Below are positions 3,176 to 59,583 of a stretch of 64,000 nt of DNA, one piece after another. Made by a program: the position numbers and the translations under genes. Each line of letters starts with the position of its first letter. The stretch's first letter is position 1. Location: the IMG/VR virus record IMGVR_UViG_3300025930_000007, positions 1 through 64,000 of that record; one strand, written 5' to 3'. The notes beneath the pieces are model-generated. The model saw nothing but the letters and a program-made list of their open reading frames with translations. It did no database searches and was not told the origin of the DNA.

Positions 3176-3955
3176 ATGAGTTTTCTTGAATCGAAGGTTA
3201 AAGGATCGATCGCGGTCGGCCGTGGGGATGGGGTAGGAATCCTTCCGGTTGGACCAGATGGCCAGGTCATTATAGCCGACAGCACTCAGCCTCTGGGAGT
3301 CAAGTACGGTAACAATGCCAGCGCCGTTGCAATGTCCATGGAGTCCCTCGCCCTCACGCAATACTTCTCAAATCTCGGGCTCAAGCCAAGCGTGCAGATC
3401 AAGTCCATGACGGAATCTCTGGACACGTTCGATGGCGTGTCCGGGGCCGGCGTGTTCAGCTATGACGGATCTCGCGCCAAGGAGACCGCCATCGCGTCGA
3501 CGTATGCCCGCTATGGTCTTGGTGCCGCGTACACGAAACTGTTGATGATCGTCGGAATGTTTCGCATGTCCACGGCAAACATGGGCATCTGGATCGCCGA
3601 CACGCTTGCGGCAAACGTACCGCAGGACGGAAATATATTCCTGAACGAGATGAACACCAATCGGACATCTCTTTATAAGCTTCCTGCTTTCTCGAACGTG
3701 ACATCGGATACGGATGTCAGCAGCACCCCGCAAACGTGGGCGCCGTACCCGATGATGGCAATTCACGTTGACCTGTCCCTGGCAACGCGCCGGATTCGCT
3801 GCTACTACCGTTGGAACGCCGAAATGTGGTGGCCTGTTCTCGACGTCGCGGACAATACGAAGATCGCCATTACGCAGATGCAGCACGCAGGCGTGCAGTT
3901 CAATTCGGGTCCAGGATTTGTCGGGTGCCCATTTGGAATTTGGGCTGACCTGTAA
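3176..3955 (+). CDS. Fibre-associated protein
   Basis: N-terminal 'KGSIAV..LPVGPDGQVIIADS' resembles a recurrent phage fibre repeat. Confidence 0.65.
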   Translation: MSFLESKVKGSIAVGRGDGVGILPVGPDGQVIIADSTQPLGVKYGNNASAVAMSMESLALTQYFSNLGLKPSVQIKSMTESLDTFDGVSGAGVFSYDGSRAKETAIASTYARYGLGAAYTKLLMIVGMFRMSTANMGIWIADTLAANVPQDGNIFLNEMNTNRTSLYKLPAFSNVTSDTDVSSTPQTWAPYPMMAIHVDLSLATRRIRCYYRWNAEMWWPVLDVADNTKIAITQMQHAGVQFNSGPGFVGCPFGIWADL

Positions 3956-51413: not shown

Positions 51414-51932
51414 ATGCGCTTCGACCTCGTCGCCTTCCTGGGAGGCCTGACTGTTGGAGCCGCGGCTGCGGCTCTATACGGTGCCACACGGAGCACGAAG
51501 CTCGGCTGGAGTGGCGGCGGTGCAGGCGGTGGTCCTGGCGGCGGCGGTAGCTTCGGAGGCAGTCCCAGCGGCTCGGGGGGCTCATCCTATGCCCCCGGTG
51601 GTACAGGAGTCTATTCTGGACCGCCTGGACCCTTCGGTGGAGGGTTCATGGGACCTAGCGTCCTGGAATCGACGCCTTCTGAGGGAGAAGGAGAGATCGG
51701 GCCGATCGTTTCCGTTCCTCCGATCATTCATGACGGAGATGGTAACGGAATATTCGGAGGCTCATTCTTTGGGGTCAACGTGGCCCCTTGGTTCTGGCCT
51801 CTGAACATCGTGCCCCGGAACGACGAGATCATCTGCAAGAAGATTCCAGGCGATCCTGAAGAGACGATGGTATGTAAACGCAGATATCCGGTTCGAGCGG
51901 TGGCTTGGGGGCCACCCGCCGGCTGGCTCTAG
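51414..51932 (+). CDS. N-terminal TM, Gly-rich protein
   Basis: N-terminal hydrophobic helix, 'TKLGW', Gly-rich linker. Confidence 0.7.
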   Translation: MRFDLVAFLGGLTVGAAAAALYGATRSTKLGWSGGGAGGGPGGGGSFGGSPSGSGGSSYAPGGTGVYSGPPGPFGGGFMGPSVLESTPSEGEGEIGPIVSVPPIIHDGDGNGIFGGSFFGVNVAPWFWPLNIVPRNDEIICKKIPGDPEETMVCKRRYPVRAVAWGPPAGWL

Positions 51933-56588: not shown

Positions 56589-56948
56589 GGGGCCGAAATA
56601 GTATCGACGGAGATCCAAGACAGGAAAGCTGCGTGTCGTGGACGCCGGTTGGCCACGTAAAACATCCGGTAAAAACCTAACTGGCAAGAGCCAGCTCGCT
56701 CGCGCGGCCTAGCCGTGTCGTCGCCCCTAGTGACGCCGATAGCCTGGGTGCGACGTTAATAATCGGTCGCTACCCGTAAGGTGATTCCTACCTTCCGGGG
56801 ATAAGAATAAGTGGAACGTGAAGCCCGCAAACCTGCTGGTGAGCGAGCGGAGCTTCGAGAGCCGCAAGGCAGAATCATCAGATACACACGTAGATGCCCC
56901 TAGACTGTGATCTTCGGACGGGGGTTGCAAAGCCCCCCGGCTCCACCA
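56589..56948 (+). ncRNA. ssrA: tmRNA with tag peptide (A)GKSQLARAA
   Basis: 5' GGGGCCGAAA..TCGAC and 3' CGGCTCCACCA with G3:U70; TAACT-GGC resume context, tag at 56683-56712. Confidence 0.9.
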
Positions 56949-56949
56949 T

Positions 56950-57023
56950 GCGGTCAAGATGTTACAGTAGCATGCCAGTTTTCCAAACTGGACGCGCGGG
57001 TGCGACTCCCGCTGACCGCACCA
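56950..57023 (+). tRNA. tRNA-Gly(TCC)
   Basis: Cloverleaf; CCAGT-TTTCCAA-ACTGG; CCA end. Confidence 0.9.
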
Positions 57024-57480: not shown

Positions 57481-57600
57481 GTGAATCAAGACCGTGGGTC
57501 ACCCAAGGGACGCTGCAAGGTGACATCTGGCCCGGCAGCCGTGGAGTCCTCCCGGCCGGGGAATAACTGAGGACCTAGGCGTCCCACTATCTTGATTCAC
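57481..57600 (+). ncRNA. Unidentified end-closed structured RNA
   Basis: GTGAATCAAGA..TCTTGATTCAC terminal stem between tRNAs. Confidence 0.5.
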
Positions 57601-57602
57601 AT

Positions 57603-57673
57603 AGGCCACGATCCAGCGATCAGCTTGGTCTCCAAAACCGAGCAGTGGGGGGCGGCACCCCGGTGGCCTGCCA
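57603..57673 (+). tRNA. tRNA-Trp(CCA), atypical D and T arms
   Basis: AGGCCAC/GTGGCCT acceptor; CTCCAAA loop; CCA. Confidence 0.7.
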
Positions 57674-58538: not shown

Positions 58539-58615
58539 CGCGGGGTGGAGTAGCCCGGTAACTCGCCAGGCTCATAACCTGGAAACCGCAGGTTCAAATC
58601 CTGCCCCCGCAACCA
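58539..58615 (+). tRNA. Initiator tRNA-fMet(CAT)
   Basis: CGCGGGG..CCCCGCAACCA with C1:A72 mismatch. Confidence 0.9.
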
Positions 58616-58622
58616 AAAATTC

Positions 58623-58748
58623 GGAGGCTGACTGACGAGGGTACTTCGCTGGTTCAATTCCAGCCTGCCCGACTAGGGCGCTCGGATCCCGAGCTCCCCA
58701 GCGGGCAGGCGCCCGATGCCTGGGCACCCCTTGTCTCCAATCGCCTCC
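58623..58748 (+). ncRNA. Y-RNA (YrlA)-like RNA 1
   Basis: GGAGGC/GCCTCC closing stem, GAGGGTACTTC, then T arm, acceptor-like stem and D-like arm. Confidence 0.6.
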
Positions 58749-58757
58749 AAAATCTTC

Positions 58758-58887
58758 AGGGGCTGCAGAGCGAGCTTACTTCACCAGACTCTTAATCTGG
58801 AGGACCTGGTTCGAGTCCAGGCTTCGGCCGAAAGGTCGATGTGGTGTATCGGTAGCACACTCAGTGGCTTGTTCGACAATTGCCCCT
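58758..58887 (+). ncRNA. Y-RNA-like RNA 2 containing a circularly permuted tRNA-Lys(CTT)-like module
   Basis: AGGGGC/GCCCCT stem, TTACTTC, anticodon arm, T arm, GAAA-capped acceptor stem, D arm. Confidence 0.65.
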
Positions 58888-58897
58888 ATAAAAATTC

Positions 58898-59082
58898 GCG
58901 GGCTGATGGATCGAGGTTACTTCGCCCTACAAAACCCCCGAAAAGGAAGGTCCGTCGAACCTTCCTCTACCGCGAAAGCGAACGGGTTGAGCGTGAGGTG
59001 CTTGTGGTAACACGCCGGCGCAAGCCGGAGAAGGAGGTTCGACTCCTCCCAAATCGACATGGCCTTGGCCGTAATTGCCCGC
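58898..59082 (+). ncRNA. Y-RNA-like RNA 3
   Basis: GCGGGC/GCCCGC stem, GAGGTTACTTC, D arm + GCAA-capped stem + T arm. Confidence 0.6.
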
Positions 59083-59091
59083 ATAATATTC

Positions 59092-59182
59092 GAGCGCTGA
59101 CTAGCGGCGTTACTTCGGAGCCTGGGCTCGAAGCCCGACACGGCGAAAGCCGTGGGCAAGTCGCTGCTTAATGATTGCGCTC
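59092..59182 (+). ncRNA. Y-RNA-like RNA 4 (short)
   Basis: GAGCGC/GCGCTC stem, GCGTTACTTC, two small hairpins. Confidence 0.55.
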
Positions 59183-59261: not shown

Positions 59262-59282
59262 AAATTTAGCATCATCAGACCT

Positions 59283-59358
59283 GGGCCGGCATGTACCGTA
59301 GTGGCGACACTGCCTTGCAAGCAGCGTGTGGTGGGTGCGACTCCCATCCGGTCCACCA
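59283..59358 (+). tRNA. tRNA-Ala(TGC)
   Basis: CTGC-CTTGCAA-GCAG; G3:U70. Confidence 0.8.
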
Positions 59359-59365
59359 AATATTC

Positions 59366-59492
59366 GAGAGCTGCAGATTGAGGTTACTTCTCTACCACTT
59401 ACGAGACGTGGTGTAGCGGTCTGCACACCGGCCAAAAGCCGGAGGTGGTCGTCCGACTCGACCCGTTGTTGCCTTGATCATCAATTGCTCTC
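59366..59492 (+). ncRNA. Y-RNA-like RNA 5
   Basis: GAGAGC/GCTCTC stem, GAGGTTACTTC, D arm + anticodon-less stem + T-like arm. Confidence 0.6.
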
Positions 59493-59496
59493 AAAT

Positions 59497-59583
59497 GGGG
59501 TCGCTTGGAGAGAAGGATCTCCACCTGTCTGTAAAACAGGCGTCCGTTTGGACTAAGCGGCGCGATACCGCACGGCCCCACCA
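59497..59583 (+). tRNA. tRNA-Tyr(GTA)
   Basis: CCTGT-CTGTAAA-ACAGG; long variable arm. Confidence 0.8.

What the first reader, a model, noticed from the sequence alone, without database searches (positions are those of the whole stretch)
58783..58860. Complete circularly permuted tRNA-Lys(CUU)-like module with an intact anticodon arm
Seen, in order: anticodon arm CCAGA-CTCTTAA-TCTGG, variable loop, T arm CCTGG-TTCGAGT-CCAGG, acceptor strands joined by a GAAA loop (no free CCA end), then D arm TGGTGTATCGGTAGCACA. No normal tRNA-Lys occurs in the window. Known: tRNA-Lys species are targets of anticodon nucleases such as PrrC (UUU isoacceptor). Inference: a non-chargeable decoy, or a precursor needing processing and ligation.
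Basis: partly seen in the sequence, partly recalled or inferred. Interest (0 to 1): 0.7.

Follow-up and report, generated by a model that had tools for sequence, protein, structure and literature searches.

The report
Phage Y RNA mimicking a tRNA
The "permuted tRNA-Lys" is the tRNA-like half of a Y RNA, one of twelve such small RNAs that a soil jumbo phage encodes next to its own Ro60 protein; this kind of RNA is already known, but the set here is unusually large and varied.

Summary
Window 58784-58859 holds, in order, a 5-bp/7-nt hairpin, a 4-nt variable loop, a T arm, an acceptor-like stem closed by GAAA, and a D arm. After in-silico re-permutation ARAGORN calls it tRNA-Lys(CUU); 0 of 100 shuffles give any call.

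It is not a stand-alone permuted tRNA. It is enclosed by a two-part leader/trailer helix (58758-58775 with 58867-58887). The same helix encloses eleven other units of the genome: five units lie in the window and seven lie just upstream of a TROVE + vWA Ro60 gene at 65257-66981. The helix carries the Ro60-site-like motif (GGUCCGAGG in one copy) and covaries across 54 copies in seven related phage loci.

The T-acceptor-D order, the closed acceptor stem and a fourth "V" stem-loop 5' of the T arm define published YrlA-class Y RNAs. The Rfam YrlA model's best two hits in the genome are sister units, though below threshold.

Five orthologues keep the hairpin stem but have five different loops (CUU, ACU, CAU, AUC and a 6-nt loop). 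Neither a Lys identity nor a Lys-specific decoy role is therefore supported. No splicing endonuclease was found. No RNA-level data exist.

Verdict: a new member of a known kind.

The parts
58758..58887 (+). Whole Y RNA unit E2: outer stem plus tRNA-like module
   Evidence: The MFE fold gives the outer stem plus four hairpins. Five orthologues average 90% column identity. In the 4-sequence alignment A1, 98.7% of cells are paired and 7 pairs show compensatory change. The Ro60 gene (TROVE + vWA_Ro60) lies at genome 65257-66981 on the same strand, outside the window.
58758..58763 (+). P1, 5' strand (AGGGGC); pairs with 58882-58887
   Evidence: All 12 units of the genome and 54 units in 7 loci have this terminal helix. 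Positions 2-4 each show 3-4 different Watson-Crick pair types.
58768..58775 (+). P2, 5' strand (GAGCGAGC), the Ro60-site-like motif; pairs with 58867-58874 (GCTTGTTC)
   Evidence: An 8-bp helix is conserved in all units with a CG/UG core. Sister unit E6 has the exact GGUCCGAGG, and orthologues of E2 have GACGAG, which fits GNCGA. The motif is described in PMC4201824.
58776..58783 (+). Linker UUACUUCA, holding the (U)UACUUC box shared by the units
   Evidence: The box is found in 11 of 12 leaders. A conserved UA in the variable-loop region is a YrlA feature. ACU can pair with AGU at 58863-58865.
58784..58800 (+).
   Evidence: Two of its 5 pairs show compensatory change. All four of loop positions 34-37 vary among the 4 close orthologues, against 18 of 131 columns overall.
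58801..58804 (+). Variable loop AGGA; its last base is the Levitt-pair partner (position 48)
   Evidence: The 15:48 pair covaries among orthologues: U:A, U:A, A:U, G:C, plus one C:A. It is A:U in all six E9 sequences.
58805..58821 (+). T arm CCUGG-UUCGAGU-CCAGG
   Evidence: It has a canonical T loop and one compensatory pair. It differs at one loop base from the T arm of the RNA beside the Ro gene of mycobacteriophage Myrna.
58822..58841 (+). Acceptor-like stem closed by GAAA: 8 bp with a conserved U-U mismatch and no free end
   Evidence: A closed acceptor stem is a defining feature of YrlA.
58842..58859 (+). U8 G9, D arm GUGU-AUCGGUA-GCAC, then A26
   Evidence: A14, G18, G19 and A21 are present. 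The Myrna RNA has the same D stem, GUGU/GCAC.
58867..58887 (+). Trailer: P2 3' strand, loop GACAAUU, P1 3' strand
58623..58748 (+). Y RNA unit E1: T arm, long acceptor-like hairpin, D arm; no extra hairpin
   Evidence: A related strain lacks E1 and E2.
58898..59082 (+). Y RNA unit E3 (185 nt); its module runs D arm, short stem-loop, T arm
   Evidence: (weak tRNA hit at 58992-59057).
59092..59182 (+). Y RNA unit E4: T-like arm plus a GAAA-capped hairpin
   Evidence: Rfam YrlA scores 30.1 bits over the full model, E 2.8e-4 in the local search. It is the second-best YrlA hit in the genome.
59366..59492 (+). Y RNA unit E5: D arm, short stem-loop, T arm
   Evidence: The consensus fold of 4 orthologues has 13 pairs with compensatory change.

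Best explanation
The element is a Y RNA of the YrlA class, encoded by a 266-kb jumbo phage of soil.

Its 5' and 3' ends pair into a two-part stem (P1 and P2) that carries the Ro60-recognition-like motif. The middle folds into an L-shaped tRNA mimic in the order (hairpin)-T arm-closed acceptor stem-D arm.

Inferred mechanism: the RNA is cut out of the long tmRNA/tRNA/Y RNA transcript. The stem is bound by the phage's own Ro60. The tRNA-like module then serves as a handle that recruits a tRNA-binding or RNA-degrading host factor, as Y RNAs tether PNPase, or gates access to the Ro60 ring, during infection.

The hairpin that looks like an anticodon arm is the counterpart of the known 'V' stem-loop of YrlA. 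Its shape is selected, but its triplet is not.

Shown here: the fold and its covariation, the family of 12 units, the Ro60 gene, and the similarity to YrlA. Inferred only: Ro60 binding, processing, and the effector.
For: 1. The Ro60 orthologue lies 6.4 kb downstream on the same strand: TROVE 5.8e-21, vWA_Ro60 2.5e-11. Seven sister units abut it.
2. All 12 units, and 54 units in 7 related loci, share the P1/P2 stem with abundant compensatory change. E6 has GGUCCGAGG paired with CCUUGGCC and a bulged C, which is the motif Ro60 contacts according to PMC4201824.
3. The Rfam YrlA model's two best hits in the whole genome are sister units E7 (30.3 bits, E 1.5e-5) and E4, both aligned over the full model.
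4. The published YrlA anatomy matches. [quoted passage not shown] All of these are seen in E2.
5. The T arm and D stem are nearly the same as in the RNA next to the Ro gene of mycobacteriophage Myrna.
6. There is precedent for a phage Ro60 binding phage-encoded Y-like RNAs and host PNPase (PMC12135203).
Against: - No RNA or protein-binding data exist. The only 'metatranscriptomic' runs look like DNA and come from a relative. The complex prediction was not run by the tool.
- Rfam's YrlA gathering score (69 bits) is not reached, and E2 itself is not hit by that model. However, the same model finds nothing in Myrna either.
- E2 lies 6.4 kb from Ro60, beyond the 4-kb rule used in the 2014 survey.
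- The window's E2 has GAGCGAG rather than a strict GNCGAA.
Confidence: 0.8

Rival explanations
1. It is a true circularly permuted tRNA gene. The leader and trailer are cut and ligated, the acceptor loop is opened by RNase P and RNase Z, CCA is added, and a working tRNA-Lys(CUU) results.
For: The re-permuted sequence is called tRNA-Lys(ctt). The acceptor-like stem has 7-8 pairs, and M. smegmatis YrlA with a 7-bp stem is cut by RNase P and receives CCA. The genome has an Rnl1-type RNA ligase.
Against: - The 'anticodon' differs in every orthologue, and one has a 6-nt loop.
- A34 is common among these loops.
- No tRNA-splicing endonuclease, RtcB or CCA-adding enzyme match was found in the genome.
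- The flanks are the Ro60-type stem shared with units that have no tRNA module at all.
- The genome already has two tRNA-Lys(CUU) genes.
- The acceptor stem has a conserved U-U mismatch.
Confidence: 0.03
2. It is a Y RNA whose full cloverleaf, anticodon-like loop included, acts as a decoy or bait for host anticodon nucleases or other anticodon-loop-binding defence proteins. The fast-changing loop would track those enemies.
For: - The hairpin has exact anticodon-arm dimensions. U33 and A38 are invariant in 11 sequences.
- Positions 34-37 are the most variable part of E2.
- The phage invests heavily in translation and RNA repair: 43 tRNAs, a tmRNA and an Rnl1-type ligase, with RtcB in relatives.
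Against: - Loop variability is equally explained by a lack of constraint.
- Many of the triplets (ACU, AUC, ACC) match no natural bacterial anticodon.
- One orthologue has a 6-nt loop.
- No nuclease or defence gene is linked, and there is no experiment.
Confidence: 0.1
3. It is a decaying by-product of recombination among the densely packed tRNA genes (the 3' part of one tRNA plus the 5' part of the next) and has no function.
For: It lies inside a tRNA array. The tRNA model scores its 3' part at 30.5 bits. YrlA is proposed to have arisen from tRNA dimers. A related strain lacks E1 and E2.
Against: It is conserved at about 90% identity, with compensatory changes in five helices and in the Levitt pair, across phages whose Ro60 proteins are only 62-82% identical. 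The acceptor strands are mutually complementary. Paralogue E9 keeps the same architecture.
Confidence: 0.04
4. The region codes for a protein (ORF 58716-59171, 151 aa).
For: An open frame exists.
Against: The frame runs across four separate structured units. Changes among relatives are compensatory in RNA helices. Gene callers placed no gene here in three related contigs.
Confidence: 0.01

Closest known systems
YrlA-class bacterial and phage Y RNAs (Salmonella Typhimurium, Mycobacterium smegmatis, mycobacteriophages; Rfam RF02553; Chen et al. 2014, PMC4201824; structure in bioRxiv 10.1101/312249)
   Same: - The ends pair into a stem with a GNCGA/GGUCCGA-like Ro60 motif.
- The tRNA-like module runs T arm, closed acceptor stem, D arm.
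- There is an optional fourth stem-loop 5' of the T arm, a conserved UA before it, and a covarying 15:48 pair.
- It is encoded on the same strand near a Ro60 gene and next to tRNAs.
   Different: - There are twelve units per genome instead of one to a few.
- E2 lies 6.4 kb from Ro60.
- The fourth stem-loop has exact anticodon-arm dimensions and is followed by a canonical 4-nt variable loop, so a whole cloverleaf can be drawn.
- The Rfam model scores only about 30 bits on sister units and does not hit E2.
Thermus phage phiLo Yrl1/Yrl2 with phage Ro60 (PMC12135203)
   Same: The Ro60 is phage-encoded and the Y-like RNAs lie just upstream of it. Both have a stem-bulge-stem with a CGA(A/G) core. 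The proposed role is hijacking a host RNA-processing factor.
   Different: phiLo has two RNAs, and no tRNA-like module was seen in the passages read. Binding is shown there and not here.
Deinococcus radiodurans Yrn1
   Same: It is a Ro60-bound Y RNA with a T-arm-like loop. Its D-like and T arms flank a stem-loop in the anticodon-arm position, as in units E3 and E5 of this window.
   Different: E2 has the opposite (YrlA) orientation.
Circularly permuted tRNA genes of Cyanidioschyzon merolae, prasinophyte algae and Thermofilum pendens
   Same: The 3' half lies upstream of the 5' half and the acceptor ends are joined by a short loop. The YrlA authors themselves note the resemblance.
   Different: Those genes have a bulge-helix-bulge site cut by the splicing endonuclease and give a conserved, decoding tRNA. 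Here there is no such enzyme, no conserved anticodon, and the flanks are a Ro60-type stem.
tmRNA tRNA-like domain
   Same: Both are tRNA mimics with a T arm and acceptor stem. One tmRNA lies 1.8 kb upstream in the same window.
   Different: tmRNA has a free CCA end and is charged. E2's acceptor stem is closed.

Membership tests
YrlA-class Y RNA | Encoded near a Ro60 (TROVE) gene on the same strand | tested here: met
   Ro60 lies at genome 65257-66981 on the + strand. Sister units E6-E12 lie 50-1100 nt upstream of it. E2 is 6.4 kb upstream, so it is outside the 4-kb rule of the 2014 survey but has the same leader/trailer.
YrlA-class Y RNA | 5' and 3' ends pair into a stem carrying the Ro60 motif (GNCGAAN0-1G / GGUCCGA) | tested here: met
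   The P1/P2 stem is present in all 54 units and covaries. E6 has GGUCCGAGG and orthologues of E2 have GACGAG. The window's E2 has GAGCGAG, a near match.
YrlA-class Y RNA | T stem-loop 5' of the D stem-loop, with a closed acceptor-like stem between them, and tRNA tertiary nucleotides | tested here: met
   U8, A14, G18, G19, the T loop UUCGAGU and a covarying 15:48 pair are present.
YrlA-class Y RNA | Reaches the Rfam RF02553 gathering score (69 bits) | tested here: not met
   E2 is not hit. E4 scores 30.1 and E7 30.3 bits over the full model, the two best hits in the genome. The model also finds nothing next to the Ro gene of mycobacteriophage Myrna, so this cut-off is a poor test for phage members.
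YrlA-class Y RNA | Bound by Ro60; modified by TruB and DusA | not testable with these tools
No RNA data exist.
Circularly permuted tRNA gene | The 3' half precedes the 5' half and the re-joined sequence is a tRNA | tested here: met
   ARAGORN calls tRNA-Lys(ctt) after re-permutation, against 0 of 100 shuffles.
Circularly permuted tRNA gene | Bulge-helix-bulge junction and a splicing endonuclease plus ligase to make the circular intermediate | tested here: not met
   The leader/trailer is a 6-bp + 8-bp stem with a 4 x 7-nt internal loop, shared with non-tRNA units. There is no PF01974 or RtcB match in the genome. An Rnl1-type ligase exists far away.
Circularly permuted tRNA gene | Anticodon identity conserved among orthologues | tested here: not met
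   The orthologues have CUU, ACU, CAU, AUC and a 6-nt loop.
Circularly permuted tRNA gene | Mature, CCA-ended, ligated tRNA seen in RNA | not testable with these tools
   No true RNA run holds the phage.

The most novel reading that the evidence does not exclude
E2 and its paralogue E9 are Ro60-tethered, full-length tRNA mimics. Unlike described YrlAs, they present a real anticodon-arm mimic. Its fast-changing triplet is under diversifying selection as bait for host anticodon-loop-directed nucleases or modification enzymes. The phage would thus couple tRNA-targeting defence proteins to a Ro60 RNP. The twelve-member array would be a panel of such baits.
Probability: 0.1. Interest if true: 0.75.

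Novelty: new member of a known kind. Interest (0 to 1): 0.38.

Why it matters
What Y RNAs do in bacteria, and especially in phages, is still largely unknown. This uncultured soil jumbo-phage lineage carries 9-13 Y RNA genes per genome beside Ro60, a tmRNA and more than 40 tRNAs. Some relatives also carry RtcB or an RNase P RNA.

The units form a natural series. It runs from a bare Ro60 stem (59 nt) to a complete cloverleaf, and it includes both known orientations of the tRNA-like module. That series could help test two ideas: that Y RNAs arose from tRNA dimers, and that the tRNA-like module is an adaptor for tRNA-binding factors.

For annotation, it shows that a 'permuted tRNA' inside a phage tRNA array should first be checked for a Ro60 gene and a shared flanking stem.

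Tried and rejected
- **Self-cleaving ribozyme.** I first thought the repeated leader (CUGA...UUACUUC) might be a hammerhead or other self-cleaving ribozyme flanking permuted tRNAs. I rejected this by inspection of the sequence: the conserved cores do not fit, and the leader pairs with the trailer. Rfam gave only a 23.7-bit Twister-sister hit on a sister unit, below its threshold.
- **tRNA with an intron.** I tested a 5' half from unit N joined to a 3' half from unit N+1. The acceptor strands are complementary only within a unit, so this is rejected.
- **Leader pattern in IMG/VR.** A loose leader pattern gave 119 single matches that I took to be chance and did not inspect.
- **E2 core pattern in public collections.** A 20-base E2 core pattern gave nothing in viral contigs. 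In metagenome and genome contigs it gave only unrelated chance matches.
- **Ro60 search of IMG/VR by peptide patterns.** No relative was found.
- **Recent copy of a tRNA gene.** The best identity to any of the 43 tRNAs is 70%, and 64% to tRNA-Lys(CUU). E2 is not a recent copy.
- **Complex prediction.** The Ro60 + E2 job was accepted but not folded, so it is no evidence either way.
- **Reads.** The 'metatranscriptomic' soil runs hold a 90-95% relative, probably as DNA, and it lacks E1 and E2. Four DNA runs hold the identical strain and so add no variation.
- **Contig look-ups.** Five of the twelve look-ups returned gene tables but no DNA at all or DNA for only one of four places. Only five E2 orthologues could be compared.

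Full report
**What is there.** The window is the first 64 kb of a 266,490-bp virus record. The record is a single contig, 57.7% G+C, with a CheckV completeness of 92%. Near-identical sequence occurs in many soil and rhizosphere metagenomes.

From 56.6 kb onward the + strand carries a tmRNA and a long array of tRNA genes. The whole genome has 43 ARAGORN calls.

- a hairpin CCAGA-CUCUUAA-UCUGG (58784-58800);
- a 4-nt variable loop AGGA;
- a T arm CCUGG-UUCGAGU-CCAGG (58805-58821);
- an 8-pair acceptor-like stem with one U-U mismatch, capped by GAAA (58822-58841);
- U8 G9, a D arm GUGU-AUCGGUA-GCAC (58844-58858) and A26.

ARAGORN does not see it in genomic order. Joined as 58835-58859 + 58784-58829 it is called tRNA-Lys(ctt). 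The call is robust to 246 of 360 ways of trimming the flanks, and no call arises in 100 dinucleotide shuffles.

Contigs from four independent DNA runs cover the element without a difference inside it, so it is not an assembly artefact.

**The surroundings change the reading.** The module is enclosed by a leader and a trailer that pair with each other.
- P1: AGGGGC at 58758-58763 pairs with GCCCCU at 58882-58887.
- An internal loop follows (UGCA against GACAAUU).
- P2: GAGCGAGC at 58768-58775 pairs with GCUUGUUC at 58867-58874.
- The leader then continues with a conserved box, UUACUUC.

The same frame encloses eleven other units of the genome. The frame is P1 of 5-6 bp, UG(A/C)N, P2 of 7-9 bp with a CG/UG core, (U)UACUUC, a body, P2', N3-5 AAU(U/C), and P1'.
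- E1 to E4 are head to tail between tRNA-Met and tRNA-Ala (58623-59182).
- E5 is at 59366-59492.
- E6 to E12 are at genome 64162-65206, just outside the window.

The bodies range from 59 to 253 nt in total unit length. Directly after E12 an ORF (65257-66981, + strand) matches TROVE (5.8e-21) and the Ro60 vWA domain (2.5e-11). Unit E6 has GGUCCGAGG paired with CCUUGGCC and a bulged C. That is the sequence contacted by Ro60 in animal Y RNAs and the model for the bacterial GNCGAAN0-1G motif (PMC4201824).

**Relatives.** The Ro60 protein has many metagenomic homologues at 58-97% identity. Six contigs with DNA (L123-L125 and L127-L129; L126 duplicates L125) are syntenic where they overlap. They carry 3 to 13 units of the same kind upstream of Ro60 and in the tRNA array.

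All 54 units form the P1/P2 stem when leader and trailer are folded together. Positions 2-4 of P1 each show three or four different Watson-Crick pairs.

Five orthologues of E2 were found: the window, L142, L123, L125 and L128. On the four-sequence alignment A1 (without L142), the full structure has 98.7% of cells paired. Seven pairs show a change on both sides, spread over P1, P2, the hairpin and the T arm. With the 3' partners slid by 1-3 columns, 30-43% of cells pair.

The tertiary Levitt pair 15:48 covaries as U:A, U:A, A:U and G:C, with one C:A. It is A:U in all six sequences of the paralogous unit E9. The L-shaped tRNA fold is therefore supported beyond the secondary structure.

**Identity.** The Rfam YrlA model (RF02553) aligns over its full length to E4 (30.1 bits, E 2.8e-4 in a 1-kb search) and E7 (30.3 bits). 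In a search of the whole genome these are the two best hits; the next two are the T-arm/D-arm false positives at tandem tRNAs that the original authors warn about. The scores are below the gathering score of 69. However, the same model finds nothing next to the Ro gene of mycobacteriophage Myrna. There, an RNA of the same build is plain to see, and its T arm (CCUGG-UUCGAUU-CCAGG) and D stem (GUGU/GCAC) almost equal those of E2.

The published description of YrlA fits point by point:
- nearly invariant T and D stem-loops with T 5' of D;
- a closed acceptor-like stem-loop between them;
- a conserved UA in the variable region;
- compensatory changes at the Levitt pair.

The authors of the YrlA structure already compare this topology with the circularly permuted tRNA genes of algae and archaea.

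**The Lys reading.** The five E2 orthologues keep the 5-bp stem, with two compensatory changes, and keep U33 and A38. Their loops read CUCUUAA, CUACUAA, CUCAUAA, CUAUCGA and a 6-nt UUAGUA. Among the four close orthologues all four of positions 34-37 vary, against 18 of 131 columns overall (post hoc hypergeometric P about 3e-4).

Paralogue E9 has the same architecture: a hairpin UUCGC-CUNNCAA-GCGAG with a G-C to U-A compensatory change. Its triplets are UCC, AUC, ACC and UAC in six genomes. After re-permutation all of these are called tRNAs, with different 'identities'. Five of the eleven loops have A at position 34.

The module is not a recent copy of any tRNA of the genome: the best identity is 70%, and 64% to tRNA-Lys(CUU). 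The genome has three ordinary tRNA-Lys genes just outside the window.

The shape of the hairpin is selected, but a Lys anticodon is not.

**Processing.** The genome has no match to the tRNA-splicing endonuclease, RtcB, a CCA-adding enzyme, RNase P RNA or an RNase PH/PNPase domain. An Rnl1-type RNA ligase lies 160 kb away. Any processing or effector must therefore come mostly from the host.

No + strand promoter-like or terminator-like site was found between 56.0 and 61.2 kb. This fits one long processed transcript but proves nothing.

No usable RNA data exist. Two 'metatranscriptomic' soil runs hold a 90-95% relative with even coverage of a protein gene and are probably DNA. In that relative tRNA-Met is joined directly to E3, so E1 and E2 are missing. 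The array evidently gains and loses units.

**Most likely mechanism.** E2 is a Y RNA. Its stem is bound by the phage Ro60, and its tRNA-like half is an adaptor or gate, as proposed for YrlA. A phage Ro60 has been shown to bind phage Y-like RNAs and to assemble with host PNPase (PMC12135203).

That it is a YrlA-type RNA I hold at about 0.8. The binding and the effector are inferred. By analogy with M. smegmatis YrlA, the 7-8-bp acceptor stem might be opened by RNase P and given CCA. This is untested.

The decoy idea survives only in a general form: bait for anticodon-loop-binding proteins with a fast-changing loop. I put it at about 0.1. Loop variability is as well explained by a lack of constraint.

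**Novelty.** This is a new member of a known kind. Three things are unusual:
- the number of units, twelve here and up to thirteen in a relative, against 355 YrlAs in 276 genomes in the 2014 survey;
- the coexistence of both module orientations, since E3 and E5 have D, stem-loop, T as in Deinococcus Yrn1;
- a V stem-loop with exact anticodon-arm dimensions, followed by a canonical variable loop, in E2 and E9.

Noticed in passing
window 56589-57020: A phage-encoded tmRNA (Rfam 116.3 bits) is followed after one base by a tRNA (56950-57020). It heads the tRNA/Y RNA array.
   Followed up: no
genome 64162-65206 (just beyond the window; L001:162-1206): Seven more Y RNA units (E6-E12) lie in tandem directly upstream of the Ro60 gene. 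E6 is 253 nt, has the exact GGUCCGAGG site and several conserved hairpins, but no tRNA-like module. E12 is a 59-nt bare stem.
   Followed up: partly
window 58898-59082 and 59366-59492: Units E3 and E5 carry the tRNA-like arms in the order D arm, short stem-loop (GCAA or CAAAA loop), T arm. This is the Deinococcus Yrn1-like orientation, beside YrlA-oriented units in the same array.
   Followed up: partly
window 58614-58890: In two soil runs a 90-95% identical relative joins tRNA-Met directly to unit E3, so it lacks E1 and E2. The array varies in copy number between strains.
   Followed up: partly
L129:13985-14286: A more distant relative (Ro60 58% identical, 212-kb contig) carries a bacterial class A RNase P RNA (204.6 bits) 2.3 kb downstream of its Ro60 gene. 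The window's genome has none.
   Followed up: partly
L125:10964-12283 and L128:14628-15947: Two relatives have an RtcB RNA ligase gene a few kb downstream of Ro60, recalling the Salmonella rsr-yrlBA-rtcBA operon. The window's genome lacks RtcB but has an Rnl1-type RNA ligase at genome 218931-219452 on the minus strand.
   Followed up: partly
window 58716-59171: A 151-aa open frame runs across units E1-E4. It is almost certainly spurious, but an automatic annotation could call it a hypothetical protein.
   Followed up: partly
window 59497-59583: This sequence ends in CCACCA and has a CUGUAAA loop and a long extra arm. It looks like a class II tRNA-Tyr(GUA) that neither ARAGORN nor Rfam reported.
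   Followed up: no
window 59282-59355: A tRNA-like sequence has a CUUGCAA loop and a CCA end. Only the tRNA-Sec model hits it, and weakly (22.3 bits). ARAGORN does not call it.
   Followed up: no
window 57481-57603: A 12-bp long-range stem (UGUGAAUCAAGA with UCUUGAUUCACA) encloses about 100 nt of G+C-rich sequence between two tRNAs. It may be another structured RNA of unknown kind.
   Followed up: no
window 51634-51725: ARAGORN reports a tRNA with a four-base anticodon (ggaa), far from the tRNA array.
   Followed up: no
L143:3590-3690 and 3712-3851 (mycobacteriophage Myrna): Two Y RNA-like units sit between gp226 and the Ro gene and share a GUCGGUUAUCC box. The Rfam YrlA model does not detect them at E <= 0.01, so the Rfam family is too narrow for phage Y RNAs.
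   Followed up: partly
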